A stretch of 64,000 bases of DNA, from positions 37,572,001 through 37,636,000 of the forward strand of contig NC_086384.1 in the NCBI RefSeq assembly GCF_036588685.1, written 5' to 3'. Of the stretch, positions 9,855-57,939 are shown piece by piece; the stretch's first letter is position 1, and each line of letters starts with the position of its first letter. Both the position numbers and the translations under genes were made by a program. The stretch comes from Mytilus trossulus. Lineage: Eukaryota. The notes beneath the pieces were generated by a model, which did not search any database, was not told the origin of the DNA, and was given only the letters and a program-made list of their open reading frames with translations.

Positions 9855-9898
9855 GTATCACTGAAGAGACATGTTTTGTTGAAATGCGCATCTGGTGC
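9855..9898 (+). ncRNA. Minimal type I hammerhead ribozyme (upstream copy)
   Basis: GTATCA-CTGAAGA-GAC atgtttt GTT-GAAA-TGCGCA-TC^TGGTGC; the stem changes relative to the 10191 copy are G-U compatible. Confidence 0.8.
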
Positions 9899-10190
9899 AG
9901 GAAAATTTGCACCATTAATGGTATTTCTACCACTGGGTCGATGCCTCTGCTGGTGGACTGTTAGTCCCCGAGGGTATCATCAGCCCAGTAGCCAGTACTT
10001 CGGTACTGGCATGAAAATACGGATTTTTTTGTGTTATTAAAATTCTAGAAATTATTATGAATAAAGGAATGTATCTCCCTCGTGCAAAGCTCTGATTCCT
10101 GTCGCGGATTTGGCTATACTTTTTGGACCTTTTGGATTATAGCTCTTCATCTTTTAAATAAGTTTTGGATTTGAAATAATTTTGCCACGA

Positions 10191-10234
10191 GCATCACTGA
10201 AGAGACATGGATCGTCGAAATGCGCATCTGGTGC
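10191..10234 (+). ncRNA. Minimal type I hammerhead ribozyme, core intact
   Basis: GCATCA-CTGAAGA-GAC atggatc GTC-GAAA-TGCGCA-TC^TGGTGC: stem I, CUGANGA, stem II, GAAA, palindromic stem III, AUC cleavage triplet. Confidence 0.85.
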
Positions 10235-33499: not shown

Positions 33500-34146
33500 C
33501 GTCGGAACTAAACACATTTATTCTAAAAACAGTTGTTGGCATGACACGGGTTATGTTCTTCTCATATATGTTATGATGGTATGATACTAAACCCCTAACG
33601 GGAAGGATTGTGCCTGATGTTCATATGATGAAATCATAATCTTTCAGTCAGTTTAATTGAAGTCTGGAGCTGGCATGTCAGTTAACTGCTAGTAGTCTGT
33701 TGTTATTTATGTATTATTGTCATTTTGTTTATTTTCTTTGGTTACATCTTCTGACATCAGACTCGGACTTCTCTTGAACTGAATTTTTATGTGCGCATTG
33801 TTATTCGTTTACTTTTCTACATTGGTTAGAGGTATAGGTGGAGGGTTGAGATCTCACAAACATGTTTAACCCCGCCGCATTTTTGCGCCTGTCCCAAGTC
33901 AGGAACCTCTGGCCTTTGTAAATCTTGTATTATTTTAATTTTAGTTTCTTGTACAATTTGGAAATTAGTATGGCGTTCATTATCACTGAACTAGTATATA
34001 TTTGTTTAGGGGCCAGCCGAAGGACGCCTCCGGGTGCGGGAATTTCTCTCTACATTGAAGACCTGTTGGTGACCTTCTGCTGTTATTTTTTTATTTGGTC
34101 GGGTTGTTGTCTCTTTGACACATTCCCCATTTCCATTCTCGATTTT
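33500..34146 (+). repeat. Abundant interspersed repeat (inverted copy 9025-9525; partial copies 30695-30938, 47403-47560, 60260-60397, 1300-1575)
   Basis: Near-identical blocks, e.g. ggggccagctgaaggacgcctccgggtgcgggaatttctc, in several copies. Confidence 0.8.
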
Positions 34147-34149
34147 ATG

Positions 34150-34270
34150 TACATGCCGTTGCTTTACTAGGAACAAGCACTTTGCACGTTGCTTTAATAT
34201 GAGCAAGCACTATGCATGTTGATATAATGTAAACAAGCCCTATACATGTTGCGTTTATAGGAACAGTATG
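34150..34270. repeat. Degenerate 30-bp tandem repeat x4
   Basis: ca(c/t)gttg.ttta.ta.gaacaagcact recurring every ~30 bp. Confidence 0.6.
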
Positions 34271-34655
34271 TATTTTACAATATCCCTCTTGATATTCAGC
34301 CATTGTTTTCAGTCTACATGATCTTATATTAAATGTATTTATAGCTTTTTCTTCTGCCAAATGTATAGTACAATATTTGATATATTTTATTCTAAATATA
34401 TAATCTTAAAACTCCTCTTAAATATTACAATGCATTAGAACATAAATGTATCACTGAAAGAAATCTTGGTACATTTTGATAATTTACACACATTTTCTAC
34501 AAGTGAGTTATTTTTAAAATACAAGAATAACACTAATTGAAAAGTCAACTTCCGCTGAAGTCAATAATTTTCCGGATTGTCGGGGGTTATCGGAGCTCTT
34601 GATAAACCAGAGAGCTTCCGAACCGGTTTTTCGCACAACTCAAAACTAAATAGGC

Positions 34656-34915
34656 TCAGAAAGAAGTAATTATAACTTCTTTTTCTTCTACAGAGTCAAT
34701 TTCATCTTTCGTGTCTACAGAGTCAATTTCATTTTTCGTGTCATCAAGTGTTTTATTATCTTCCTTCATAGCTGTTTCTTTCATATCTTTTGGAATCGTC
34801 CTTTTACCAAGAGACCTTTCCCTAATTGAAAGCCACCACTGCATGGCCTGGTTTTTTAAGCTTGTTTTGAAGACATATGTCCGAGAATTGGTGCACAAGA
34901 TAAGAGCTGTCTGAT
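34656..34915 (-). CDS. PKS terminal exon: PH strands 6-7 and helix (DQTALILCTNSRTYVFKTSLKNQAMQWWLSIRE), acidic repeat tail, -IITSF*
   Basis: tcatctttcAG acceptor, phase 1; PH-type strand-helix with conserved Trp; candidate AATAAA on the minus strand at 34391-34386. Confidence 0.82.
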
Positions 34916-37900
34916 CTGAAAGATGAAACACAAGACGTTAATTACTAGTATACTTTATATTTCATAAATTTAAGATAAGGAATATCTTACATGTCTAGGA
35001 ATATGATTGGTTAAAAGCGACTGCGTGGGGACCGTGTATATTCCAAATTAGGTAAGTAGGCGGGGCATATTTCAATACATGAGTAGTTCTGGTGTTACGT
35101 CCCTTTATAAACACAACCCATTGCTGATGAAAATTTTCAAGGTTTCAACAAACGATGGAATTGATGATGAACGTTTGAAATATATTCATAAAACACATTT
35201 AAAGATAACAAGTTGTTATTGTTGGCATTTTTTTTGTATATACCAATGGAAGAAGGTTCTTTATACTAACTGCAATGAATACTTGATAATTTACGTAGGT
35301 GACCAGTGTAAATACCACATGTTAAGATAGTCCGTAAGAAACATATTACGACACTATGTTTCAAAAAGATTTGCTTAATACATGTGTCTAGACGTACATA
35401 CATATTGCAAAAAATGATTCGATTGTAACTAACTTCTTGAAAAAAGTAAAATAACAAAAATGTTGAACTCCAAGCACAATTACAAAAACGGAAAGTCCCT
35501 AATCAAATGGCCAAATCAAAAGCTCAAACTCACCAAACGAATGGCAAACAACTGCCATATTTCTGACTTGGAACTAGCATTTTCTTATGGAATTAAATCT
35601 AGCGAAACCTCTCACTTTTATGACAGTCGCAGTTAGTGTTGATGTATTTATTTTCGTGGATATCGATTTTTGAAAAGCATAACTTGTACTTGCTCGGATA
35701 AAATCTTGTGTTTTTTCCATCCTAAGTTTAAAAACATACCAATAATCAATTTGTATTACTTTGAAATTGATTGAGATTCGTTATTCACCTATACACACGT
35801 TATCCACGCTAATTGGTATTCAACGAATAAAATTGAATCCTTACTTAGTCAAATAATTATTCGCAATCAATTAATACAGCAAATAATATAAATCTCCTTT
35901 CTTAGAAATGCGGAAATTTTTATGATAAATATTCCAACGTTATTGTTTCTATAAAAAAATATTACAACTGTTTGTGTATTACATGTCGCTGTTTTCTGAT
36001 TGTACGGTATGGGTATTTCTACTCTACTGGTCTTGCTCAATGTTGAATGCCATATATTGAATGCTAACATTCACGTTTTATTTGGTCCTTGTCTTACAAG
36101 CAATGATTACATATTATTTTAACATGGGCTTACCATTCATATCGACCATTCTTATATCTGTGATATCGGTGTATGCAATTCTCCTGTCCATCTTGTGGGG
36201 TTTTGTTCCCCATTTTATGAATTTTTCATCCTCTGATCCAAGGAAGAGGTATACTTCATGGTCCCAACCTTTCTTTGTCTGTTTCATGAAAACATCTGCA
36301 AAAAAATAATTGTACTTTTAAGATAATGTTGTTTATATTCCCAGTTGAAAGGTGTTAGCAAAACTGCTCGGTTGCAATAAATTATACTTTGGAGAAATTT
36401 TGTGAATTGCAGCTGTGTCTTACTGTTCTTTAGTGCTGTTGATTTATTGTGATTTTCTAAATGTATGTATTCTGCGGATTAAGATTTATGTGTTTATATG
36501 CAATGTATGTAAATGAATGTGTATGTGGGTGATCCAATTAAGAATCCCTTCACTTCAAGAAATTAAAGGATAGAAATTATATTTAGTAAATTATATTGAA
36601 TAAGAATTGATATATATGACGATAAGCTGTCGACATATTGCACTAAACTTACAATATCAATTGCAGTATAAATACAAACTAAATCAGTACTCACTTGAAA
36701 TATTTTTTTCTGAAGTTGATATTCCAGTTTTACAACTTGCTACGTTATATGACGTCATTTCCTCTAGTGTAATACCCGGATTTGCTACGAATCTCTCTAT
36801 CATCATTAGCATAAAGTTGAGAAGATTATGAGCTCTATCCTGGTCAATTATAAGTGTACTACATCCCAGTTCAAGTTCGAGTTTCTTCGTAGTTTCATCA
36901 TTCCACACATAAAAGATGGTTTCGTTGTAATAATTTCCTACCTGAAGTTTCTTAATTTTAATTGGTGTACGTTTTCCATGGTCAATAGCTAGGGATGATA
37001 TTTTTGTAGTTTCCTCCATTACAATTTGGTGCCGGAAAATCTCATTGACAGGGTGGCCCTTTACGTCCTGTATGATGTCAATAAAAGGCATATATCCGTG
37101 ATCTAATGCCTTCATGATCTTTATCTTATTTCGTTGAATAATTTCAGCAACTTGTATTGAACTGTCTTCGAATTCTTGATATAGCGGTATACGATTTGTA
37201 AAACGGTTTGCCTCTCTCTTCAACTCAGGGAAAAACATTCGGCAGTCAAGGGTTGTCATTATAGCAATTGTTGGTTGGCGTAGTTCAACGTGTAGTAGAA
37301 TTTCAAACATGGTAGCAAAAAGGTGAAACAGGGTACATTTGTTACCTTCAAGCAGAGGTCGTATCCCTGTAGCTACCTTTTCGGGTACTCTTACTCGAGT
37401 AAACTCAAAGAAGTTTGGATCTGTTGTTAAATCTCCCGTCAAAGACAATGACATTGGTTGGAGATTCTCTGGAATTACAGTTTGCCAGAAGGTTCTAAGC
37501 TCGACATCATCGTCGATCAACCGTCTTTCAATATGCAGTGCTATATCTACTGGATCTGTAGGGTCTTCATTAGGGGCGTCTGGTCGAAGGTCATTCATCA
37601 TCATCGAGATGGAATGCAAATCTAGTGCTAAATGGTTGAATAAAAATCGCATGATCGCTTGGCGACCTTTTTTGGCGTAGAAAACCCTCATTGGTAGGTC
37701 TGTTGCTGGATCAAACAGATAGTCATCTACGTTTGGAGGATGTCTAGTTTTGTGAAGTAGAAGAGATTTCTCAACAATGCGGAAGTCTATTTCAATCTCT
37801 TCCGGTTCCAGAATAACTCGTTTGACACCATATCTTATGTCGTCATGACCCGGTATAAAGAGTGTCCGCAGAGCAGGATACTTTTGATGAATTTTTACTA

Positions 37901-40900
37901 TCAACGGTTTCCAATATTCTGGCATAGCTATGACACTATCAACAGTTATATCCCCAAACATGTACAAAGATGGGTCATATTTATTCCTCATATGACCATT
38001 GTATGCTCTCTTTTCGTAAGGTGTCATAGAATTTGCGACATTAGTTTCAATTTCCTTTATTTTTATTTCCTCTTCGGCATTACCATTTTCAAGTTTGTCG
38101 TTTATTGCTTCTGCTAGTGCCATCATTGTTGTTCCGTCTGTCAGCAGCATAACTAATGAAACTTTGACATGCATAACCTTCAGGACTGTTTGTGCAAACG
38201 TCATAGCAAGCATAGAATCAACACCCAAAGCTGATATTAGCGTGTCTTCATTGAGCAATGAATGTTCTACTCCAAAAACATCGCTCGCCAGAATAAACAA
38301 TGCTTTCATAATGGCTTCCATTCTCTCTGCTCTTGGTATAGACATTATTTCATTTAGGTCAAAGTTCAATGATGCTGAATTCATCTTAGATCTTCTTTGT
38401 TCTAATATTTTGTCGACAAAACCTCTAAATCTGTACTGTACAAGGGACATGTCCTCAGAAATAAGTCCTGATGCTATTACATCCCAATCAAAAACGCCAT
38501 ACGTTACTTGTGGGCATGTGTTCTTCAAGACTTCTATTAAACTTTTCCTAATGGTTGGTATACTTAATGAAAGTAGTCCTCTTTTCTCTAAAATCTGTTC
38601 AAGACTGTCATCATTAATGGCCATGCCTACTTTGAGAGGACCCCAATTTATACTTTGACCACATAAACCAAGATGTCGACGATAGTGAGCCAATGAGTCA
38701 AGGAAAGCATTTGCAGCTCCGTAATTTGTTTGACCAGCATTACCAAAGACAGACGTCATGGAGGAATGAATGACAAAATAATCTAGAGACAGTTTTTCAG
38801 ATACAATATGTAAGTTCCATGTCCCTAGAACTTTTGGCATCAGAACTTTCTGTAGTTTTTCTCTTGTCATGGATATAAATAGAGCATCATCAAGAACACC
38901 AGCTCCCTGGAAAATGCCTTTTATTGGATATGGAGCTTCTGATATTATTCGATCAAATGACTCTTGGAGAGACTCTATACTAGTTATGTCTGTCTGCATA
39001 GTTGTAATAAAGCATTCATAACGGTCTGACATTTCCTTGATTTTAGTTTGTTTTTCATTTGAAGGTTCCCTCCTTGATAAACTGACGATGAATCCTGCTC
39101 CTCTTTCTGCTAACATATTTGTAATTTCCCAACCAAGACCCGTCATCCCACCAATAATGACGTATACAGCTGTTTTCCTGAAAATGAGATTATCTGGAAT
39201 TCTAATATCGCACATCTGTGCATCGCTCGATCCAGTGACGTCTACAACATCACTTGGAAATGGTAGTAAAGTTGTGTCAGAAGGTTCAAGTCTTATTTGA
39301 TCTTTGGACAAAAGCTTATGTTTCTGCTTTTTCAGCCAATTGATAACTGTTGGGACAATCTGTGGGAGTTTGGTTTTTGACAAAACCTCATCAACATCAA
39401 CAGTGACGAATTGGATATGAGATGAACGGGCGGCCACATAACGCTCAATTTGTAGAGGAAGGAACTGTCGTAGGGATGCTATCATTGTCACGTGTTTAGC
39501 TGCTTCTAAAAATCCATGTATCGTCTGAAGATCTATTTTCATCAATGGGATAACTATTGGTGAAATTTGGTCAGGTGACATGATTTCCTCCAATTTGAAC
39601 ACCATAGCTGGTCCTGATTTTCTAGACGCTATTAGATTTTTTAAGATAATTGCAGACATTTCATTTTCATTGTCAGTAAGAATAAGGTAGTTTTTCTTTG
39701 ATGGTAACTTGCTTACTAATTCCCATAAAAGAGAGGTAGTGCAAAGCATGCCGGGAACATATGGTTGTAAATCTGTCAGACATACCATGCATGATTTAGG
39801 AATGTTTACAACAGACTGAATTTTAAGTGGATAACACGCTACAAATTCTTTCATCGATTTATCTTTCTTGTCTTTTTTATCTATTCTTTTGCCAACAACT
39901 TCAAATGTAAGGACTCCGTAACCATCTTTATGATCTTGCGGCCAGATAGTCACTGCTTCCACTGCATTCTCAAAAGTCAATGGGTATAACGAATTGGTGT
40001 GCAGGCATGCTTTCGATACCTGAAGTAACACTGATTGATCAAACATATCTCCATCCATCTCCTGTAGGGAATAGAAGGTATCATGCAAAACATCTGGAAG
40101 GTTGCTCCTGTACTCTGCTACACAATACTTGTCAATTGACTTGACTTTTGGAGTTTTTATTCTTTCAGAATCTGGTTGCGTTACAAACTCGTTTTCATAT
40201 ATTTTCTTCTTTCTGATGGCAATTTCTGGTATTTCTAGTCTTTTATTGTTTCCTTTGAGAACAGTAAGCAACTGTTTCATGCATTCCTTAAAACTTGGAT
40301 CGATATCTACGAGATACAACTTGAAACTTTGTTCCCTTAGAACTGACCGAACCAATCCCCATAGCTCTGATCCGACAAGGTTAAACTGGCCTGATACGTC
40401 GGGTGATTGAGTACTTTGAGTCAGAATGTAGATTGGAATCGAATCCTGTCTATCTGCCATGAACTTTAAAATGGTCAGTAATAGATCACAGTTGTTGACC
40501 AAATCATCTAGTAAAACGGTACCATCCTTCGTATATTCTTCTTTCATTCTTCCATTTGCAAAAATAATACATGTTTCTTTGTCGTCTTTCACTGATTCAG
40601 CTTCACTGGGTTTGAAATGTTCTTCCAATATGTCTTCGATGATATTGGTTGAATTATTGGCAATGTAATAGCTAATTTCAAGATCACCATAAACATGATC
40701 CTTAAAAATCTGCTTTGTCTTTTCATCCCGGGAAATGAAAATAAACCTTCTGTTTTTTGGTGGATTTGATATCTCGTCCTTTTTAACATCTTTTTCTTCA
40801 TCGTCGCTTGAGCTAAATTCTTTGTCCGTGTCTTTCTTTTCATTGCTTGATAAACTGGAGCCTCCATCTTTATCTTTGTCTTTTTTCTCGCTTGAATAAC

Positions 40901-43900
40901 CTGAACTGTTTGAGTGTTTGTCATAGTCATCCTTGAGGAGTTCCAAATCTGCTTTACAAGTAAAAGAGCTCTTATCTGATTCTTCATCATCTTGTGTATC
41001 TTTGTCATGTAATTGTGGGAGGCCTACAGATGTTTTCTTGATGTCTTCTTGCAAGTCAACTTCTGTCCAAACTATTTTGTGTGCAATTTGACCGTTGTGT
41101 CTCTCTGATTTTTCAATTGCTCTAATCGTAAAGTCCTTGACCTCAGCCACTACTATACCATCAGGTTGAAGTAAAAGTAGGTTATACAAAATTTCATCCT
41201 TAGAAAATGATGTAAGATTCATGTATGCTAACATATTTTTTTCTGGGGATCGTCTCAAAATAAGTTTCTTAAATCCTGCAGGAAGTAGTTGTCCAGAAGG
41301 TCGTTCCTCCATCAATTCAAAAATGATTCCAGGTGTTTGTAAAAGGCCATCGAGGATTGCTGGGTGAATGTTTGTTGTATTCAAATCTTTGATCAGCAAG
41401 TCTGACAAGGTCACATTAACAAGGCATTCAGTTCTATTTTTATATCCATCACCAAGTATCTGTAGGTCATCACCGTATGAAAAGCCAAGTGTTTTCAATG
41501 TTTCATATGTCTGGTCTTTTGGATGAAATATTTTACATCTTTCTTTTATCTTCTGAATATCAACAAAATTTACCTTTACATCTTCCTTGATAATTCTTGA
41601 TGTTCCCTTTGCTATGATGTCATTTCCTGTTTGTATCGTAAAGGTCATGCTCTCCAATGGCTCTAACGACTTTAGCATTACAAAGGCTTCACAAGGGCTG
41701 CCTGGTGATAAACGGAGAGGTCTTTGAAAATCAACTCCTATTTCGAGATTAAAAGGTGATTGTTGTAGCAGACTTTTACTAGCTTCTATTGCCACTTCAG
41801 CATACAAAGCTCCGGGAACTAAAATATTTCCTGCTACGTTGTGCTCATAAACATAAGGAGTAGAGGTGGTACTGATGTCTATTTTGAAAGGTGTATTATC
41901 GTCGGACTGTCGTTTTACGAATGGATGAGCTGATGCCAATTTTCCTCGACCTTGTTTTCTAAGTTTTGTGCTGTCGGCTTCAAATAACGATTTCATTCTG
42001 TTCGGTATGTACTTTGGTATATCAGATATTACAGCAGTGTACGGATTAATTCGTTCCATTTCAGGATTAACACCATTTTTGTAGAATTCTCCAAGTGAAT
42101 CCATTATGCAGGATGATTCTGAATTCACGTTCATAGAGGGCAAGCTTATTGCCTTTCCTTCTGCGAAACTATCACTCAAATGTGTTCTTAGAACAGGCTT
42201 TGGGCCAATTTCGACAAATATATTTATAGTATTAAGTAAGCCAGCATTTCGGACCGCTTTTTGAAACATAACAGGTTTCCTGACATTTTCCCTCCAATAA
42301 GAAGCCGTAACAAATTGTTCATCAGTGGCTACTTCACCAGTCACAGTCGAAAATAATTTCGTTGTAGGTGTTGTACCAGTTAACCCGTTGAGGGCATTTT
42401 CTAGATCAATGCTTGACTTTTCCGTATGATGACTGTGATAGGCACATTTAACATGAAGTGGTCGTAAGAAAATGGGCTCGTCTTCTTCTTCACTTTTCTT
42501 TTTCAGCTTTTGCATTACTTCATTGACGATATCAGTATCACCGGATACGGTTGAAGATTTAGAACTATTGTACACGGCAATGTTTATTTTTCCATCATAC
42601 TCCTGACATAACTCGTCTACCATCTCTGTGTTGCTACTGCCAACCACAAACATGGACCCTCCTGTTGCCTTTGATAAGATTGACGATCTATGATATATGA
42701 CCTTGACAGCATCTTCAAGAGATAGACAACCTGCAGCATATGCAGCGGCCACTTCTCCGACGGACTGCCCCAATACAACTTTCGGTACTATACCATAATA
42801 CTTCCAGAGCTCTGTCAATCCAATTTGACAAGTAAAAATAGCCAGATGACCAACCAATGGTTCACTCAAGTCTGCTGCATCTTTCAATTTCTCATAAATG
42901 GACCATTTAGTATAAGGCTTCAATAGTTCGTCCACTTTTCTTACAGTTTCACTAAACACTGCTTCACTTTGCAAAAGTTCTTGACACATTCCAGTCCAGG
43001 TTGTTCCAACACCACAAAACACAAACACAACATTTGGCGGGTTCAAACCAGCTGGTCGAACACTTTCTATCGTTTTCAATTGTCCTTCTGCTTTTTGGCG
43101 GAGATCTTCCTTTGATTCACACACGAACGCAAGTCTGTACTTGAAGTGTTCTCGTCTGCAGGAACTTGTGTATGCAATACTCTTTAGGCTGTCTACGCAT
43201 GTGTCTTTCAGACAATTTATGAAATGTTGAAGACTATTTGTCAGGCCACCATTGTCCAGAGCTGACAGAAAGACAATGTATTTATCTTTGGTATCATCAT
43301 CGGTTTCTTGTACATCTTCTAATGGAAACTGTTTTATAATTGCGTGACTATTTGTACCTCCAAATCCAAAAGAGTTTACACAACTCATTCTTGTTCCGTC
43401 GTTTAACGTCGGCCAATCTTCAACAGCTATTGACACCGCCATGTTGTATTTTGGGAAATCAATCTTTGGGTTTGGTCGCTCAAAATGAAGAGATTTAACA
43501 GTTTTGCCATGCTTCATCATAAGAAGAACCTTAACGATTCCAGCAACCCCTGCTGCTGATTCCAAGTGACCAATGTTTGTTTTTACTGATCCTATTCTTA
43601 GTGCCTCTTTTCCTTCTTCTCTGTATTTAGAGAAAAATTCACCCAAACTGTTAGCCTCAATAGGATCTCCAACAGGTGTACCAGTTCCTACCAAAATAAA
43701 TATATCATCAGAAACATCCAAAAGGGACTTAGAATTCTCCAAAATACACCCTCTTTTTTAATCAAGCCCTTAGTGCAATATGTACATTCCTTTACACGGT
43801 AGTTGATGAAATGGTCAAATTATTTCAATAAATATATTCCAATACAAAAGTAACTGCGTAAATAATTTCATCGTACTGTTAGTCCGTTCCCTCGAAAATT

Positions 43901-46900
43901 TATATTTGATGAAAAGGAGACAGAAAGAAAAGAGAGGCGAACGATTCCAGAGGGTCATTTAAACTCATAGATTGAAAATAAACTGACAATGCCATGGACA
44001 AAAAAAAAACAAACAGATGAACACTGGTACACAAAACACAACAAAGGACACAAAAGATTGAGCAAGCATTCATTTGTTCAAATGAAAAAGAAATATAACT
44101 ACAATCAAATACTTGAATTAAACCTACTTCAGTAAGTATTCACAGGAATAACAAAGATAAAATACAAATTTCATCTTTACAAAAACAAAATAAAACTTGA
44201 GGGGGTTACACTACATATTCAGAACATAAGTAATTAATTAAGTACACCAATTAATGTATAGTTACCGTGAGCTTCTATATACTGCACCAAGTCTGGGCTG
44301 ACATTGTTCTTTTCGTAAACTTCTTGTAGCAGTTCTGTCTGCATCTGTATAGATGGCGCTGTAATTGGGGTCATTGTTCTACCATCTTGGTTACAACCTG
44401 TCGCTATGGTAGCCCATATTTTGTTACCATCAGCTCTTGCCTATAATAAAATATACATAATGTCACTAAAATTTAACATTGATACTAATCTGGTATTCAG
44501 AATGGATATGTACAGATTAAAACGAGACAAGGGGCTATATACTGTGTCAATATCTTAACGTTCCGAGTCTATGTACAAAGTTGTTAGCTGAAAACAAGTA
44601 GTACTTTAGAAAATTTGCCTTCAAATGATTCAAAGTACATGTATGATAAAGATGGTCTCCTTGTGACTTTTGGATGTAGAACAGCAAATAGCGGTATCCG
44701 CTGTCTATTTTGCTTTTTTGTTTACCGTGCATGTATAGATTCTGTGCCATTCCTGGAAAGCAAATCGATGAATTTATATCACGATAAAATCAAAACCATT
44801 CCTCGAAAATTCAACTTGAGGCAGGTACTGTATCATTTACTAAGTTATAAGTTATATTATCTATCCCTCTTGGTCCTTGAAACCTGCTGTAGAATACTTC
44901 TTAAAAAATCGACACCTATCTTAAATCAATATTGAATATATACTTACATCCTTGAGTGTTTTAAGAACAATGACGCCACCTCCTTCGCCTCTAATATATC
45001 CATCTGCTGTATCAGAAAAGGCTTGACACTGTCCTATGGGCGATACCATTCTTGCTTTTGACAGTGGAATAAGGATATCTGGATACAGAATACTATTGAC
45101 TCCCCCGCAGATTGCCATAGTACAATCACCTAACGAAAATATTTTCAAAATGATATTGTGGTTCAGAAACTGGATCGATATTCGGTGTTACAAAAAGAAA
45201 GTAAAATCTCAAAAATTCTTTAAAATAACTCCGTGGAAAATTACATCAAATTACAAAATCAAAACAATAAACACAACAAACGAATACACAACAACTGTCA
45301 TATTCCTGACTTGGTACAGGCATTACCAAAATGACGTCAACAGTTGTTGCCTTTTAACTTATTATCAATGCGCATCTCTTAACTTTGTTTTTTCTTTTTG
45401 GTTTGATTCATCAATGTGAAAGATTTTGAAAATTTGTCTCGACATTTACCATTCTCAAATATATAAAGACATATATGGTAACTCAACGGGACCTATACTT
45501 GATTTTCACTGCTGTTGTTCTCTGTTAGATAGTTATTATATCACTGGTATTTAAACCACATCTCCATACATAGACTTACCGCTTTTCAGAGCTTGTGATG
45601 CTAAGTGTATAGCAACCAGAGATGAACTACATGCGGTATCTATAGACATGGATGGACCAAGGAGGTTATAGACGTATGATATACGAGCAGCTATAATACT
45701 TGGAGCAGTCCCTGTCAGTGTGTAGTTACTAGCAACTGCTGGGTCTTCGGTAGCAGAACTTTTATAATCGTCATTCATTACTCCTGCAATTAACAATTGA
45801 TAATTTAAAGTAGTGTATATAACTGATCTTGTTATAACAAACTTTTAACAACACAAAATGTGTCCCCATGCCATCTGTAAAATAGAGAATAGATACGGGA
45901 AAAGTGTCAAAGAGAAATTAACCTGACTAAGGAGCACCAATACAGCGAACTGTCTTATTAACAGTTATTTATATTAGTTTAGACTGGTTCTTAATATGAC
46001 AAAGTGCATGGGCCACTGCTGAAGCAAAACACAATGATGAGTTGAAAGTAATATTCGAACGTTTTTACCAATATCTAAAATAAAAATATACCTAGTTGTA
46101 TCACTGTTTAGCTTAACAAAAGATTAAATGCAATTTAATGTAAATTTGAAAGCAAAAAGATTACATAAATTTGCGCTTTCTGCTAGCTCTTAATTGTTAA
46201 AAAATATATGTACCTTTAAAGGAAAACAACTCCTTCAAATGGATATTACATTACAGGATCGATTATGGACGCGGCAATTGACGGATTATCAAAAGTAACG
46301 TTGTATTGCACATAAGCTAAACATACATTGAAGGCCGTACGGTGACCTATAGTTGTTAATGATGTTTGTGTCATTTTGGTCTTTTGTGGATAGTTGTCTC
46401 ATTGGAAACCATACCACATCTTCTTTTTGTATATTGAGTTAGAGAGCAACCAATTAACTTCAAGGGGTTTTGTTTTTAAGTCTGAGTCAGAATTTATTTT
46501 TTCGATGCTATCAATCAAATTAATCATGTTTTCTCTACAAATTTTACACTTTAAGATATGAGGAAAATTTGGATTCAGTATAAATTGTTTTGTCATCTGC
46601 TTTTAATGCTCAACATACCAATGTAAACACCAGTCCGTGTTTCTTGAATATCTTTTCTCATTAAACCGCCATCTTCAAGTGCCATGTGAACACACTCTAG
46701 AATGTATCGCTGTTGAGGGTCCATTTTAGCTGCTTCCGGTTCGCTAATTCCGAACATTTTTGGATCAAACTCATCAAAGCTAAAAAAAAACAACCATATT
46801 TGTATTCTGTGAAACCGCTATCAATGAATTAATTGGTTTTTAATCACATATGTTTCTAACACGCGAATTTCTCCTTAATATTGGTGGCTAAAAATCGCTA

Positions 46901-49497
46901 TTAATGGTTAACTACTCAAATAACTAGGCTGAACCCGCAGTAAAGTAATAATTTTTTATGGTTTTAACTTTTTCATTTTAATGCTGCAATATCATTGCTT
47001 GTTGTTGTTAATTTAAGTCACAACTTTTTCTAGACAATTCCTCGATAAGGGTTTATTCTGTGCATTACACCCAGTCTGAAAAATCATCATACACCCTTAT
47101 AATAACAAATCCACACTACTTGTAAATAATTTTATACATACAACTGTTCAACGATATTGAGTATTCAAGACCCATAAAAAGTTAAAACAAAACAACTCAT
47201 GTATATGCAAAACCCTCTAAAATTTGCAGACTATGCAGGCACTATGTAATACCTTGAATTTAATCATCAATTATACTTGATTAAATTTTACGTTTTTCTT
47301 TGAAAAATCAAATAAATCCTTAAAAAAATCAGCACTGCTATTTAGAGTTTTCTGAAAATTTCTATTGAATCGTAACAATGTCTATCGGCATCTCAAGAAA
47401 ACAAAATTGAGAATGGAAATAGGGAATTGTCATAAAGACAACAACCCGACCAAAGAGCAGAAACCCAACAATGGGTCTTCATGATAGCGAGAAATTCCCG
47501 CACCCAGAGTTGTGCTTTAGATGGCCCCTAAATAAAAAAAATTACTAGTTCAGTGATAATGTAAGTATGATAATATACATACTTTGATAAAAATCCACCT
47601 CTGCGGACATATGTTTTACCAGGTTCGTCGTAATCTGCAGAATAGTATTCTTCAACATTCCATCTTTCTGGCGGGATTTCTACCACATGGTTCTCTCCAT
47701 TCACCAGAACCCGCCAAAAATCATCAACAGTTTCCGCGCCAGGAAATTTTCCACCCACACCGACTATAGCAATGGCGTTATCTAGATCTAAACCGGATCT
47801 AGAGAAAAAAATATGTTCAAATGTAAATACAAAAATAAAGAACATAAAAACTTTAATTTTGACCGAAAAAATGAGATGCAATTGTCCTGGAAATACAATT
47901 ATCTATTCCAGAATACATTTAATTTTATGTTTTCCAAAATTTAAGCCTCATTTTCATAGGTATGCTGCTCCTTGCAAGGCAATATATTTCCTGCACGCTT
48001 TGCACCATAATATTAATAAATGATATCAATATATATTGATGTAACTTACTCTTTATCTGGTTCAATATTTATCCTTCTTGACTTAAATTGAGGTAACTGG
48101 TCCATAGGATTTACGTCTTTTCCTTGCGGTCCCATTTCATCAACCTTATCACCCATCCACTCTCGGGCTTCCTCCATTAATGCTTTACTATCCTCATCGT
48201 CCATGAATCCCCCCTGTTAATAAAAGAAAATCAAAATATCTAAGTATTGGTTGTTTGCTTTGTGCATTTTAACTTTCTTTGATATATAGTAACAAATCTA
48301 GAAGTCTTAGGTCTAAAATTAAGAATAATCATATTCTGTAAGCTACCGAACATTTTGATTTAAAATCCTTCTTATTTCTACAACATTTCTGAATATTTAC
48401 ATTCATATCTGCCAAAAACGTATAGACAAAAGTTAGTTTCAAAACACAGAATTAGTTTTTTCCCATGAATATGAAGTATATACTATACATTTTCTTTTGG
48501 AAAATAAAAAAAATCCCAAACATTTCGATAGTTCAGTAGCAAATAAATATAACTGCATGCACCGAGATGTTCTTTCTTAAATTAAATATTAAATCAGCGA
48601 ATGTGTCCGATTGAAGGACATCTTTAAGAGTTTATTTAAAATGTGTTTGTGCATCTTTACTGCAATAAATATATTAACACGTGTAAAGAAAAAGGAAACG
48701 AGTTTGTATGAATATCTTTTCAAACAAATAATTATCTATAGACGTTAGAAGTATGCTTTTGGTTATTTAGACTTTCAGTCAATGAGATATGGAATATATA
48801 TAATATATATATACTCATTCTTTCTTGTAAAAATAAGATTGTCTAGCCGTACCTTTGAAACTATACAATTTAAGTCTTCTGAAAAGACTACACCGAACAG
48901 CTGTAGACATTTAGACGAAGTTTTATAGAGATATTGGTATTTATTAAAAGTTGAAACGTTTAAACCCGCTGCATTTGTTTGCACCTGATACAAGTCTGGA
49001 ATCTGATGTACAGTACTTGTCGTTTGTTGATGTCATTTATAAATTTTTCTCGTTTCTCGGTTATTTTTATATAGATAAGACCGTTGCCTTCACCGTTTGA
49101 ATGGTTATACACATGTCATTTTTGTTATAACTTGCTGTTCGGTGTAATCCAAAGCTCCGAGTTGGTTACCGTACCTTTAATAGTTATAATACCTATAATA
49201 GTTACTTTTATAAACTGTGACTAGTATTGCGAGTTGTCTCATTGGCACTCATACCACTTCTTCTTATATCTATATATTATCGATTATTGTATTTTTTTAA
49301 ATAACTTGTACATTTATCGAGTTTTTATTGAACAATTGTTGGGTTCTGTCTTATTGGTAATCACCCTTTTTAACCACACGCGGTTTAAGTTTTGTAGTGT
49401 ATTGCAGACAATACTGAAAACATACCATTTGGCTTCCTCCAGGGCCTCCAGGGCCGCCCATCGGGCCTCCCATCTGGCCGTGGCCTCCTTGCATCAT
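34656..49497 (-). CDS. Spliced type I (probably iterative) polyketide synthase, KS-AT-DH-psiKR-ER0-KR-ACP-C-PH, ~2862 aa; join(49497-49426,48213-48050,47798-47583,46779-46619,45783-45580,45129-44948,44440-44266,43687-36695,36295-36134,34915-34656)
   Basis: All 9 introns are GT..AG with matching phases (0,2,2,1,1,0,1,1,1); total 8589 nt is divisible by 3. Motifs: KS DTACSSS/EAHGTGT/NIGHLE; AT GQSVGE/AYHS; DH HNVAGNILVP and HPAILD; KR GGMTGLG/LDD/NYGAAN; ACP GVDS; C-domain NHLALD; PH C-terminal RTYVFKT..MQWW. Confidence 0.9.
36134..36295 (-). CDS. PKS exon 9, N-terminal half of a PH-like domain (VFMKQTKKGWDHEVYLFLGSEDEKFIKWGTKPHKMDRRIAYTDITDIRMVDMN)
   Basis: tttttttgcAG acceptor, AATG|GTAAGC donor, 162 nt, symmetric phase 1-1, stop-free. 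Confidence 0.82.
36695..43687 (-). CDS. PKS exon 8 (6993 nt): KS C-terminus (to ~43330), AT (~43040-42040), DH (~41930-41090), acidic linker, psiKR, degenerate ER (~40100-39250), KR (~39190-38480), ACP (~38340-38090), condensation domain (~38030-36760)
   Basis: 2352-aa ORF in the track. The true exon start is ttttggtAG|GA ACT GGT; a strong donor TCAA|GTGAGT at 36695 lies just before the in-frame TGA. Confidence 0.95.
44266..44440 (-). CDS. PKS exon 7, KS (ARADGNKIWA..NQDGRTMTPITAPS..YIEAHG); absent from the ORF track
   Basis: Hand translation gives NQDG, ITAPS and YIEAH; splicing to exon 8 rebuilds EAHGTGT; tatAG acceptor, CACG|GTAAC donor. Confidence 0.94.
44948..45129 (-). CDS. PKS exon 6, KS (CQAFSDTADGYIRGEGGG)
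   Basis: KS GY.RGEG motif; ttcgttAG acceptor, GAT|GTAAGT donor. Confidence 0.94.
45580..45783 (-). CDS. PKS exon 5, KS catalytic Cys (GPSMSIDTACSSSLVA)
   Basis: DTACSSS motif; ttgcAG acceptor, G|GTAAGT donor. Confidence 0.95.
46619..46779 (-). CDS. PKS exon 4, KS (FDPKMFGISEPEAAKMDPQQR..TGVYIG)
   Basis: KS DPQQR motif; poly-T AG acceptor, G|GTATGT donor. Confidence 0.94.
47583..47798 (-). CDS. PKS exon 3, KS N-terminus (IAIVGVGGKFPGA..FWRVL..IPPERW..GGFL)
   Basis: Canonical KS start motifs; ttttttctctAG acceptor, AA|GTATGT donor. Confidence 0.93.
48050..48213 (-). CDS. PKS coding exon 2 (GGFMDDEDSKALMEEAREWMGDKVDEMGPQGKDVNPMDQLPQFKSRRINIEPDK)
   Basis: Acceptor ttttcttttattaacAG, donor GA|GTAAGT; open frame; phase 2 joins the first KS exon (GA+A=Glu). 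Confidence 0.8.
49426..49497 (-). CDS. PKS coding exon 1 (MMQGGHGQMGGPMGGPGGPGGSQM); the exon including UTR runs 49538-49426
   Basis: Acceptor tattttcAG at 49540-49539, ATG ATG at 49497, donor ATG|GTATGT. GC-rich island in AT-rich DNA; phase 0 matches the next exon. Confidence 0.7.
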
Positions 49498-56745: not shown

Positions 56746-57118
56746 TTTTGTAAATGTTATATATGTTTATTTATTCATGCGTATCAAATATGTAAATACA
56801 TACATCACATCTTCCTATATCTAAATAAATAATTATTAATATTCATAGGTCCACTTATGGCTGACTATTCACATTAAGACATTTATGATAATAAAATTAT
56901 GATAACTTCAAATAATGACTTATTTACTTCATTTATTTAATTATAATGATTTGGCAATTATTAAAATGAGACAACTCTCCATCAGTGACCAAAGGACACA
57001 GAACTGATGCAAAACAGACGGAAAAATTCTTTGTTAACCTGTCTCATCATCGCTCTGTTAATAGGGGAATTAAACTGGACCCCTGCTGTTGTTTCATTCT
57101 TGCATATGTCAAAGTATC

Positions 57119-57817
57119 AATCAGCGGGTGGCCAGTTAATAAGGTTATCCAATCGGCAATCAGCAGTTAATAAAGTTATCCAATCGGCAATCAGCGGGTG
57201 GCCAGTTAATAAGGTTATCCAATCGGCAATCAGCGGGTGGCCAGTTAATAAGGTTATCCAATCGGCAATCAGCGGGTGGCCAGTTAATAAGGTTATCCAA
57301 TCGGCAATCAGCGGGTGGCCAGTTAATAAGGTTATCCAATCGGCAATCAGCGGGTGGCCAGTTAATAAGGTTATCCAATCGGCAATCAGCGGGTGGCCAG
57401 TTAACAAGGTAATCCAATCGGCAATCAGCGGGTGGCCAGTTAATAAGGTAATCCAATCGGCAATCAGCGGGTGGCCAGTTAATAAGGTAATCCAATCGGC
57501 AATCAGCGGGTGGCCAGTTAATAAGGTTATCCAATCGGCAATCAGCGGGTAGCCAGTTAATAAGGTTATCTAATCGGCAATCAGCGGGTAGCCAGTTAAC
57601 AAGGTTATCTAATCGGCAATCAGCGGGTAGCCAGTTAACAAGGTTATCTAATCGGCAATCAGCGGGTAGCCAGTTAATAAGGTTATCTAATCGGCAATCA
57701 GCGGGTGGCCAGTTAATAAGGTTATCTAATCGGCAATCAGCGGGTGGCCAATTAACAAGGTAATCCAATCGGCAATCAGCGGGTGGCCAGTTAACAAGGT
57801 AATCCAATCGGCAATCA
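57119..57817. repeat. 39-bp minisatellite, ~18 copies (AATCGGCAATCAGCGGGTGGCCAGTTAATAAGGTTATCC)
   Basis: Direct reading; one unit lacks GGGTGGCC (~57164); variant SNPs occur in adjacent blocks. Confidence 0.97.
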
Positions 57818-57939
57818 TCGACTGAATCAGGAATTGGCCGAGTTGTGACGACTGTAGGGAAATATTGATATAACTTTAAAAGGCAGAAGTACAACACCCC
57901 GAACTGAACCTTTTGAACAGAATGCCTATTTTGTTTTGG

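What the first reader, a model, noticed from the sequence alone, without database searches (positions are those of the whole stretch)
34656..49497. Animal type I PKS ending in a condensation domain plus a hidden spliced PH domain (KS-AT-DH-ER0-KR-ACP-C-PH)
Seen: the 7-kb ORF appears to stop after a C domain, but a consensus donor (TCAA|GTGAGT) just before the stop splices in phase to two further exons. These encode ~90 aa with PH hallmarks: FMKQTKKGW strand-loop, FIKW, I..TDITDIR, ALILCTNSRTYVFK and the helix QAMQWWLSIRE with the conserved Trp. Known: PKS-C fusions exist (fungal LovB and TwmB, mycobacterial PpsE), and animal FAS/PKS usually end in a TE. I know of no megasynthase carrying a PH domain. 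Inference: a membrane- or signal-recruited polyketide synthase that transfers its product to an acceptor at a specific membrane, which may be an undescribed animal biosynthetic system.
Basis: partly seen in the sequence, partly recalled or inferred. Interest (0 to 1): 0.92.

Follow-up and report, generated by a model that had tools for sequence, protein, structure and literature searches.

The report
Mussel polyketide synthase ending in PH domain
A mussel (Mytilus) gene for a giant polyketide synthase really does splice two small extra exons onto its end, adding a PH-like domain after the releasing (condensation) domain. The layout is shared with scallops, already sits in public gene models, has not turned up in any paper I could search, and has no known function.

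Summary
The minus-strand 2,352-codon open frame (36684-43742) encodes the end of KS, then AT, DH, KR, ACP and a condensation (C) domain.

The added ~92 residues are predicted to fold as a PH-superfamily domain. VIA-align gives Z 12.4 to MTMR6 PH-GRAM and 12.1 to DAPP1 PH, and the ESM Atlas model gives TM 0.77-0.83 to PH clusters. No Pfam PH family reaches its threshold.

It is not truly hidden. RefSeq models in four Mytilus species already include these exons, and UniProt names a fragment "PH domain-containing protein". The same KS-AT-DH-KR-ACP-C-PH layout occurs in four scallop genera, in a third mussel-like lineage, and in two more paralogs of this genome.

Mollusc PKSs with a terminal C domain are published (PMC10764717). 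I found no paper mentioning the PH domain.

Membrane recruitment is untested. The strand that usually carries K/R-x-R in phosphoinositide-binding PH domains reads D-H-E here, and a KQT-xx-GWDH motif is invariant or nearly so in every copy.

Verdict: a real, undescribed variant of a known clade, of moderate interest.

The parts
49426..49497 (-). Exon 1 coding part: ATG at 49497, then 24 codons of Gly/Pro/Met/Gln-rich low-complexity N-terminus. The 3' boundary is approximate.
   Evidence: An exact match to residues 1-24 of P0013 begins at 49497. My script did not resolve the donor.
44266..48213 (-). Six small 5' exons encoding the N-terminal linker and most of the KS. tblastn ranges: 48213-48049, 47797-47579, 46790-46608, 45784-45578, 45130-44948, 44440-44246. 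Junctions resolved: 48050|47798, 46619|45783, 45580|45129, 44948|44440, 44266|43687.
   Evidence: tblastn of P0013 on the window, 90-100% identity; GT..AG junction search; Pfam ketoacyl-synt E 4e-87 on the full models.
36695..43687 (-). Giant exon (about 7 kb) encoding the end of KS, KS-AT linker, AT, DH, spacer with ER-like region, KR, ACP and C domain.
   Evidence: ORF listing; Pfam; 99.87% identity over 2,334 aa to P0013; acceptor at 43687; donor at 36695 seen in spliced contigs.
42132..43028 (-). Acyltransferase domain (ORF residues 239-537).
   Evidence: Pfam Acyl_transf_1, E 1.5e-49.
41103..41912 (-). Dehydratase domain (ORF residues 611-880).
   Evidence: Pfam PKS_DH_N E 3.3e-9 and PS-DH E 1.5e-15.
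40752..41045 (-). Ser/Asp/Glu/Lys-rich low-complexity insert after the DH.
   Evidence: Translation; pLDDT 22-27 in the model.
39306..40751 (-). Spacer with a Rossmann-like (psi-KR-like) part at 40257-40751 and an ER/MDR-like part at 39306-40025. No Gly-rich NADPH motif, so a degenerate 'ER0'.
   Evidence: No Pfam or PDB sequence hit. The AF2 model (mean pLDDT 48; 70-85 in the last 150 residues) matches MAS, KR-ER didomain 3slk, and the JamJ, CurK and human FAS ERs at E 1e-9 to 1e-4. No GxGxxG/A or GGxG motif is present.
38631..39170 (-). Ketoreductase domain (ORF residues 1525-1704).
   Evidence: Pfam KR, E 1.1e-55.
38103..38291 (-). Acyl carrier protein domain (ORF residues 1818-1880).
   Evidence: Pfam PP-binding, E 4.9e-5, 23.9 bits against a cut-off of 20.8.
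36750..37715 (-). Condensation domain (Pfam-matched part). Its C3 motif reads N-H-L-A-L-D at 37620-37637 in place of HHxxxDG.
   Evidence: Pfam Condensation E 4.7e-11 and 5e-11 over profile positions 112-446 in P0015. PDB phmmer best hit is the NRPS AB3403 (4zxh), E 2.9e-6. The FNHLxxD motif is present in all 8 orthologs.
36296..36694 (-). Intron (399 nt, GT..AG) that contains the ORF's in-frame stop at 36684-36686.
   Evidence: Joint seen in 4 of 4 runs; the retained-intron contig has depth 2.4 against 125 for the spliced contig.
36134..36295 (-). Exon encoding the first half of the PH-like domain (beta1 to about beta4), including the KQTKKGWDHEV loop.
   Evidence: Translation; spliced contigs; family HMM E 2.4e-30; conserved in scallops, a third lineage and 2 paralogs.
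34916..36133 (-). Intron (1,218 nt, GT..AG) with repeat-derived sequence at about 35336-35669.
   Evidence: Joint seen in 4 of 4 runs; isolated depth inside the intron comes from short contigs.
34803..34915 (-). Second half of the PH-like domain: last strands (R-x-Y-V-F-K-T) and the C-terminal helix with the conserved Trp.
   Evidence: Translation; AF2 model with strands plus helix 165-179 at pLDDT 73-82; PH-fold matches.
34656..34802 (-). Acidic, probably disordered tail of 48 residues (15 D/E, 8 K/R) ending -I-T-S-F (34659-34670), then the stop TGA at 34656-34658.
   Evidence: Translation and residue counts; pLDDT 30-41; C-termini compared across species.
34407..34655 (-). 3' untranslated region covered by transcript contigs.
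   Evidence: Contigs from X5 and X10 reach 34407 and 34412; X9 reaches 34446.

Best explanation
This is the mussel ortholog of M. trossulus LOC134692010, a gene for a 2,862-residue type I polyketide synthase. It belongs to the published mollusc PKS group that ends in a condensation domain.

Shown here:
- Ten exons: seven small 5' exons, one 7-kb exon and two small 3' exons.
- Domain order KS-AT-DH-(degenerate ER-like spacer)-KR-ACP-C.
- A roughly 92-residue PH-superfamily domain and a 48-residue acidic tail, both added by splicing that removes the apparent stop.
- Conservation of the C-PH fusion in Mytilus, in scallops, in a third mussel-like lineage, and in three of the four PKS-C genes of this genome.

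Inferred mechanism:
- KS, AT, KR and DH build a partly reduced, probably unsaturated chain on the ACP. No working ER is expected unless one acts in trans.
- The C domain keeps the second His and the Asp of its motif (NHxxxD). It probably releases the chain by acylating an amine or alcohol acceptor rather than by hydrolysis.
- The PH-like domain does not catalyse anything. It probably positions the synthase by binding a partner, either a protein or a non-canonical lipid, through its KQT-xx-GWDH beta1-beta2 loop, which is invariant or nearly so.
- Classical phosphoinositide binding is unlikely because the basic beta2 signature is missing.
For: Gene and domains: Pfam on the ORF and on the full models; tblastn exon map at 99.9-100% identity to P0013.

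Splicing: both junctions in contigs of 4 runs from 4 studies; identical junctions in four public Mytilus models.

PH fold: the ESM Atlas model gives TM 0.77-0.83 to PF00169 clusters over 89-91 residues. The AF2 model has pLDDT 73-82 with six strands and a C-terminal helix. All top Foldseek hits are PH or PTB, for example DAPP1 at rmsd 1.7 A over 79 columns. In VIA-align all top 50 are PH-superfamily, with Z 12.4 to 9.6.

Conservation: Argopecten, Pecten, Mizuhopecten and Ylistrum proteins carry the same architecture. The alignment shows F, KQT, GWDH, WG, R-x-[YF]-[VI]-F-K-T and the helix Trp as invariant or nearly so (KQTxxGWDH is invariant). A third lineage has the same phase-1 junction. Two paralogs on contig C7 have KR-ACP-C followed by PH exons at E 1e-13 to 1e-15.

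C motif: FNHLxxD in all 8 orthologs.

ER-like fold without an NADPH motif.

Purifying selection: of the listed contig variants in the big exon, 29 are synonymous and 3 are not.

Published context: mollusc PKSs with C domains and N-terminal introns (PMC10764717).
Against: No product, acceptor, localisation or binding partner is known; every functional step is inference.

No Pfam PH family reaches its cut-off (PH_21 16-21 bits against 27; PF00169 is absent).

The structure models were made on P0035, a mis-spliced public fragment that lacks the true beta1 strand, with only 6 aligned sequences. The ER-like model has a mean pLDDT of 48.

The first His of the C motif is Asn, so C-domain activity is not assured.

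The transcript contigs reach only into the 7-kb exon, so one continuous mRNA from exon 1 to exon 10 is not shown here.

The runs are labelled RNA only by the index's guess.
Confidence: 0.7

Rival explanations
1. One reading: the PH domain is a classical phosphoinositide-binding membrane-targeting module. It recruits the synthase to a specific membrane in response to lipid signals, and the C domain hands the chain to an acceptor there.
For: Among the best structural matches are phosphoinositide-binding PH domains: DAPP1, TAPP1, ARAP3 and the CERT PH. The domain has a net positive charge in Mytilus, with 16 K/R against 11 D/E. Lipid-metabolic enzymes often use PH domains this way (my own knowledge).
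Against: The beta2 start reads D-H-E (D-H-K in two scallops) where the K/R-x-R signature sits. The basic beta3-beta4 loop of Mytilus is acidic in scallops. PF00169 does not match at all; only atypical PH families match, and below threshold. Most PH domains do not bind phosphoinositides specifically (my own knowledge).
Confidence: 0.15
2. The PH-like domain is an accessory of the C domain rather than a targeting device. It would dock on the C domain and help bind or gate the acceptor substrate, as PH/PTB/GRAM-type folds bind peptides or lipids.
For: The PH-like domain always follows the C domain directly in mussels, scallops and paralogs. The best structural match is a PH-GRAM domain, MTMR6, Z 12.4. 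The conserved residues cluster in the usual ligand loop.
Against: The linker is variable in length and sequence (about 20 residues in Mytilus, about 50 and polybasic in scallops), which fits an independent module better. There is no positive evidence for docking.
Confidence: 0.12
3. The C-terminal domain is a conserved but functionally neutral remnant of exon shuffling, and the enzyme works like other mollusc PKS-C proteins without it.
For: One of the four PKS-C genes in this genome has no detectable PH within 10 kb downstream. The PH region diverges faster than the PKS body: 33% identity against scallop (35 of 107), and 39% against 69% for the body in the third lineage. The helix Trp is Phe in two paralogs.
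Against: The domain is retained with an invariant loop motif across mussels, scallops and old paralogs whose C domains are only 31-32% identical. The splice phase is preserved. The spliced form dominates in the contigs.
Confidence: 0.05

Closest known systems
Mollusc 'canonical' type I PKS clade with terminal condensation domain (Lin et al., Nat Commun 2024, PMC10764717)
   Same: KS-AT-DH-KR-ACP-C order. The few introns are concentrated at the 5' end and one very large exon follows. Bivalves, including Mytilus and Argopecten, are listed there as carrying this PKS type. The KS scores higher against bacterial PKSs (CurL, 404 bits) than against animal FAS (about 283 bits).
   Different: The paper and its held supplements do not mention a PH domain or pleckstrin. 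Here two extra 3' exons add a PH-like domain and an acidic tail.
Fungal LovB-type highly reducing PKS (KS-MAT-DH-MT-ER0-KR-ACP-C)
   Same: Inactive ER-like region plus a terminal C domain after the ACP. LovB (7cpx) is among the fold matches of the spacer and among the KS sequence matches. By analogy a trans-acting ER is conceivable (my own knowledge of LovB/LovC).
   Different: No MT domain was detected. LovB carries no PH domain. The host is an animal and the gene contains introns.
Mycobacterial PpsE and MAS-type synthases (the names that the automatic annotations give these proteins)
   Same: The reducing-region fold matches MAS and MAS-like PKS best, E 1e-9 to 1e-7. PpsE also ends in a C-type domain (my own knowledge).
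   Different: These are bacterial lipid-virulence pathways with partner acyltransferases. They have no PH domain. The RefSeq names ('PpsC/PpsD-like', 'mycocerosic acid synthase-like') are similarity labels only.
PH and PH-GRAM domains of lipid-handling proteins (MTMR6, DAPP1, TAPP1, CERT, Osh3)
   Same: Predicted seven-strand sandwich capped by a C-terminal helix with a conserved Trp. Z 9.7 to 12.4, rmsd 2.2 to 3.4 A over 87-99 residues.
   Different: Sequence identity is 9-15%. The basic phosphoinositide signature is absent. A family-specific KQT-xx-GWDH loop is present. The domain is attached to a megasynthase.

Membership tests
Type I polyketide synthase | KS with active-site Cys and two His; AT with GxSxG; KR; ACP with a phosphopantetheine Ser | tested here: met
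   Pfam: ketoacyl-synt E 4e-87, Ketoacyl-synt_C, Acyl_transf_1 E 1.5e-49, KR E 1e-55, PP-binding above cut-off. DTACSSS, EAHGTGT, NIGHLE, GQSVGE and GVDSM are visible in the consensus.
Type I polyketide synthase | Functional enoylreductase (MDR fold plus a Gly-rich NADPH loop) | tested here: not met
   No Pfam or PDB sequence hit. An ER-like fold is predicted, but no GxGxxG/A or GGxG motif is present. This makes it an ER0.
Animal FAS-like PKS (AFPK) | KS closer to animal FAS than to PKS; many introns along the whole gene; no C domain | tested here: not met
   KS scores about 400 bits against bacterial PKS KSs and about 283 bits against animal FAS. The intron pattern is that of the 'PKS' group of PMC10764717. 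No phylogeny was built.
NRPS-type condensation domain | Pfam PF00668 above the gathering score | tested here: met
   42.5 bits against 30.6 on the window ORF; 46-49 bits in M. californianus and Argopecten; 61-66 bits in the paralogs.
NRPS-type condensation domain | HHxxxDG catalytic motif | tested here: inconclusive
   The motif reads N-H-x-x-x-D in all 8 orthologs: the second His and the Asp are kept, the first His and the Gly are lost. Activity cannot be judged from sequence.
PH domain superfamily | Seven-strand beta-sandwich capped by a C-terminal helix | tested here: met
   AF2 gives six strands plus the helix at pLDDT 73-82; the true beta1 is missing from the fragment that was folded. The top 50 VIA matches are all PH-superfamily, Z up to 12.4. 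The ESM Atlas model gives TM 0.77-0.83 to PF00169 clusters. These are predicted structures only.
PH domain superfamily | Conserved Trp in the C-terminal helix | tested here: met
   Trp is invariant in 4 Mytilus and 4 scallop proteins. It is Phe in the two C7 paralogs.
PH domain (Pfam PF00169 and related families) | Sequence profile match above the gathering score | tested here: not met
   PF00169 is not reported. PH_21 scores 16.4-20.9 bits against a cut-off of 27, Carm_PH 16.9 against 26.4. UniProt nevertheless names the fragment 'PH domain-containing protein'.
Phosphoinositide-binding PH domains | Basic K-Xn-[K/R]-x-R signature across beta1 and beta2 | tested here: not met
   The beta1 Lys residues are present, but beta2 begins D-H-E (or D-H-K, D-H-Q) in all copies. 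The motif definition comes from my own knowledge, and no residue-level structural alignment was available.

The most novel reading that the evidence does not exclude
Bivalves have a family of partner- or membrane-tethered megasynthases. In this reading a non-canonical PH-like domain, with its KQT-xx-GWDH ligand loop, places a PKS-C enzyme at a defined site, so that the C domain acylates a membrane-resident or protein-bound amine or alcohol directly. This would be a mode of spatially coupled polyketide release not known for any PKS.
Probability: 0.15. Interest if true: 0.8.

Novelty: new variant of a known kind. Interest (0 to 1): 0.55.

Why it matters
Animal polyketide synthases are only now being characterised, and none of the mollusc PKS-C enzymes has a known product or release chemistry. 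A conserved PH-like domain directly after the releasing domain is a concrete, testable handle on where the enzyme works and what it hands its chain to.

I found no paper describing a PH-type domain on any PKS or NRPS. If the domain does target or scaffold the synthase, that would be a new way of organising polyketide release.

The practical points are smaller. Public gene models already carry the domain under misleading bacterial names ('PpsD-like', 'mycocerosic acid synthase-like'). ORF-based gene calls and domain surveys truncate the protein at the intronic stop.

Tried and rejected
- **Pfam on the two small exons separately:** exon 2 gave nothing, and exon 3 gave only a sub-threshold DUF7171 hit at E 2.7e-4. 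This was not informative because the domain is split.
- **Homolog searches with the ORF or its last 240 residues:** these returned mainly ORF-only calls that stop at the intron. The spliced proteins came from cluster members instead.
- **The look-up of encoding contigs:** One metagenome scan gave the third-lineage locus L005 instead. The other 79 loci match only a repeat inside the neighbouring intron.
- **Complex prediction of the C domain against the PH region:** no verdict (score 0.00, controls not run, after four 'busy' answers). This is no evidence either way.
- **PDB sequence search and Pfam on the DH-KR spacer:** no hit. Only the fold search was informative.
- **Joining the exons:** I did not type or join the window's exons into a spliced protein. 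All whole-protein steps used public protein ids (P0013, P0035). That is why the fold was made on P0035, a mis-spliced fragment that lacks the first five residues of the domain.
- **Junction script:** it resolved 5 of 9 junctions. The two 3' junctions rest on the contigs instead.
- **Literature:** PKS + pleckstrin + condensation gave 0 papers. PKS + pleckstrin gave 18 and PKS + 'PH domain' + architecture gave 3; none looked relevant by title or abstract, and I opened only one, the surfclam paper. PKS + scallop or Mytilus gave only expression lists carrying similarity names.
- **Other checks:** the Rfam gathering scan of the window found nothing.
Full report
**What is in the sequence**

On the minus strand an open frame of 2,352 codons runs from 43742 to the TGA at 36686-36684. 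Pfam finds the following, in order:
- the C-terminal part of a ketosynthase;
- an acyltransferase (E 1.5e-49);
- a PKS dehydratase;
- a ketoreductase (E 1.1e-55);
- a carrier domain;
- a condensation domain (E 4.7e-11, 42.5 bits against a cut-off of 30.6).

Eleven bases before the stop lies TCAA|GTGAGT. Downstream there are two exons with good acceptors and a GTAAGC donor, at 36295-36134 and 34915-34659, both entered in phase 1.

**Is the splice real?**

Yes. I laid contigs of four public runs on 34000-39000. The runs come from four studies and carry two organism labels. The index only guesses that they are RNA.

All four runs carry both joints at exactly the predicted bases: 36695 to 36295 and 36134 to 34915. 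Both read CT..AC on the plus strand, which is GT..AG for this gene. The joints sit on contigs of up to 6,993 nt that continue far into the 7-kb exon.

The only contig inside intron 1 has depth 2.4, against 125 for the spliced contig of the same run. The contigs end near 34407, which gives a 3' UTR of about 250 nt. The spliced form itself is the argument that these are transcripts.

The contigs do not reach the 5' exons. A single mRNA covering all ten exons therefore rests on the public gene models, not on my data.

**Whose gene is it?**

The 90%-identity cluster of the ORF contains spliced RefSeq and GenBank proteins:
- XP_063408418.1 (M. trossulus, 'uncharacterized protein LOC134692010', 2,862 aa, P0013);
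- XP_071145761.1 (M. edulis, 'mycocerosic acid synthase-like polyketide synthase', P0015);
- XP_052082670.1 (M. californianus, P0008);
- CAC5421604.1 (M. coruscus, P0010).

All four continue from '...EKNIS' into 'NVFMKQTKKGW...' and end '...EVIITSF'.

P0013 matches the window at 99.87% over the 7-kb exon and 100% in several small exons. Its first 24 residues start at 49497.

The domain is not hidden from automatic annotation. An older M. edulis annotation breaks the gene into many fragments. One of them skips exon 9 (P0011). Another, mis-spliced, is named 'PH domain-containing protein' by UniProt (P0035).

**Is it a PH domain?**

By sequence the support is weak. PF00169 does not match. PH_21 scores 16-21 bits against a cut-off of 27.

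By predicted structure the support is clear.
- The ESM Atlas holds a model of P0035. Its residues 92-185 align to PH-domain clusters (TRIOBP, DAPP1, PLEKHA2 and others) with TM 0.77-0.83 over 89-91 residues.
- My AF2 model of P0035, built with five full-length homologs as the alignment, gives pLDDT 73-82 for residues 103-180, with six strands and a C-terminal helix.
- Foldseek's top hits are all PH or PTB domains, with probability 1.0. E is about 2e-3, diluted by 120 disordered residues. DAPP1 aligns at rmsd 1.7 A over 79 columns.
- VIA-align against 48,161 chains puts only PH-superfamily folds in the top 50: MTMR6 PH-GRAM Z 12.4, DAPP1 12.1, ARAP3 11.8, TAPP1 10.9, TFIIH p62 10.8, CERT 9.7.

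One caveat applies. It lacks the true first strand, and the alignment was shallow.

**Conservation**

- *Scallops.* A HMMER scan of 1.84 billion representatives with P0035 found a 2,715-aa Argopecten irradians protein whose residues 2561-2645 match the PH region (36% identity, E 1.8e-6). Pfam shows KS-AT-DH-KR-ACP-C before that region. Searching with that region found the same architecture in Pecten maximus, Mizuhopecten yessoensis and Ylistrum balloti.
- *Conserved residues.* Aligning four mussel and four scallop domains shows F, K-Q-T, G-W-D-H, W-G, R-x-[YF]-[VI]-F-K-T and the helix Trp as invariant or nearly so (K-Q-T and G-W-D-H are invariant). Overall identity is only 33% (35 of 107). The C-domain motif reads F-N-H-L-x-x-D in all eight.
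- *A third lineage.* The metagenome-derived contig JYMV01036621 is 69% identical in the PKS body. Its big exon ends A|GTATGT and its next exon begins cag|AT GTG TTT ATG, which is the same phase-1 'N-VFMKQT' junction.
- *Paralogs.* Within this genome the PH exons of this gene are single copy at high similarity. The C domain, however, finds three more open frames of about 2,300 codons on contig C7, all carrying KR-ACP-C. A family HMM finds PH exon pairs downstream of two of them: E 5e-15 and 2e-13 for the first exon, 0.007-0.011 for the second, with 'FMKQTTHGWDHQV' and 'YIFKT'. It finds none within 10 kb of the fourth.

The C-PH fusion is therefore old and has been kept through duplication.

**The rest of the architecture**

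The 621 residues between DH and KR have no Pfam or PDB sequence match. An AF2 model was built with 8 sequences. It is poor overall (mean pLDDT 48) but reaches 70-85 in the last 150 residues.

The model shows a disordered Ser/Asp/Lys-rich insert followed by two alpha/beta regions. Foldseek matches these regions to the psi-KR/ER part of MAS, MAS-like PKS and the KR-ER didomain 3slk, at E 1e-9 to 1e-7. It also matches stand-alone and FAS enoylreductases (JamJ, CurK, human FAS ER) at about 1e-5.

The region contains no GxGxxG/A or GGxG motif.

The KS scores about 400 bits against bacterial PKS KSs and about 283 bits against animal FAS. Together with the intron pattern, this places the gene with the 'canonical' mollusc PKSs rather than with the FAS-like AFPKs.

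**What is already known**

Lin et al. (Nat Commun 2024, PMC10764717) state that the mollusc PKS clade contains members with and without NRPS-type C domains. They also state that the few introns of these genes cluster at the N-terminus, and they list Mytilus and Argopecten among genera with this PKS type. Neither the text nor the held supplements mention pleckstrin or a PH domain.

Library searches combining PKS with pleckstrin homology, 'PH domain', condensation domain or domain architecture gave nothing that looked relevant by title or abstract.

The PKS-C clade is therefore known, and the PH appendage appears to be undescribed. The caveat is that the library holds only open-access papers and preprints.

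**How it probably works**

Shown: the domain order, the splicing, the predicted fold and the conservation.

Inferred:
- The synthase makes a partly reduced chain, because KR and DH are present and the ER is degenerate.
- The terminal C domain keeps the second His and the Asp. It releases the chain onto an amine or alcohol, as terminal C domains do elsewhere.
- The PH-like domain positions the enzyme.

I rate classical phosphoinositide targeting as unlikely (about 0.15). The strand that should carry K/R-x-R reads D-H-E (D-H-K or D-H-Q in some copies). The basic beta3-beta4 loop of Mytilus is acidic in scallops. The motif rule itself is from my own knowledge.

The invariance of the beta1-beta2 loop still points to a specific ligand. 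That ligand could be a protein, an unusual lipid, or the C domain or its acceptor. A docking test of C against PH gave no verdict.

**Verdict**

The architecture and the fold hold, but 'hidden' and 'undescribed system' overstate the case, and membrane recruitment is untested and not favoured in its classical form.

This is a new variant of a known kind, with a clear experimental path. Earlier notes of this scan on the same stretch (s1-823731, s1-823810) agree with what I found for the C motif and the dead ER.

Noticed in passing
window 34659-34670 (-): The protein ends -I-T-S-F in all four Mytilus species. The four scallop orthologs end -[QH]-T-[YH]-L after otherwise unalignable tails. Both fit the S/T-x-hydrophobic C-terminal pattern of class I PDZ ligands (pattern from my own knowledge), which hints at scaffold binding. 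The two C7 paralogs end -S-L-L-F.
   Followed up: partly
G000 C7:18,717,702-18,718,841, C7:18,523,867-18,525,030 and C7:7,016,994-7,017,938 (loci L086-L091): There are three further PKS-C genes in the same genome, each a roughly 2,300-codon open frame with KR-ACP-C. Two lie about 190 kb apart and have PH-like exon pairs 0.7-2.5 kb downstream. The third shows none within 10 kb.
   Followed up: partly
window 40752-41045 (-): A roughly 98-residue Ser/Asp/Glu/Lys-rich low-complexity insert lies between the DH and the ER-like region. It is predicted disordered and is absent or different in scallops by the consensus.
   Followed up: no
window 49426-49497 (-): The first coding exon encodes a Gly/Pro/Met/Gln-rich low-complexity N-terminus. 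About 85 residues precede the KS in all Mytilus models, whereas the scallop KS starts near residue 9.
   Followed up: no
window 34000-34166 and 35336-35669: Short stretches show very high summed contig depth (6,000-34,000 at 34000-34166; 16-320 inside intron 2) with many loose ends. They are most likely high-copy repeats transcribed elsewhere, not part of this gene.
   Followed up: no
L005 10295-10408 and loci L006-L084: The ORF that carries the third lineage's PH exon runs on into an intronic repeat (residues 80-136 of P0039). That repeat matches hundreds of contigs of the same metagenome record set, so it is an abundant bivalve repeat that gets called as protein.
   Followed up: no
window 57164-57817: A minisatellite of 39 bp x 16.8 copies at 97% identity. 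It explains the two overlapping ORFs at 57007-57897 and their odd Pfam hits.
   Followed up: yes
window 9855-10234: Another reader noted a retrozyme with two hammerheads here. An Rfam scan of the whole window at gathering thresholds returned no family at all. I did not run the permissive search.
   Followed up: no
P0016 (Logan, 2,340 aa): A public ORF call from another sample reads through the position of the window's TGA (…SSEYW…) into different intron sequence. It is an allele or sister species without that stop, which shows that ORF-based calls of this gene end arbitrarily inside the intron.
   Followed up: no
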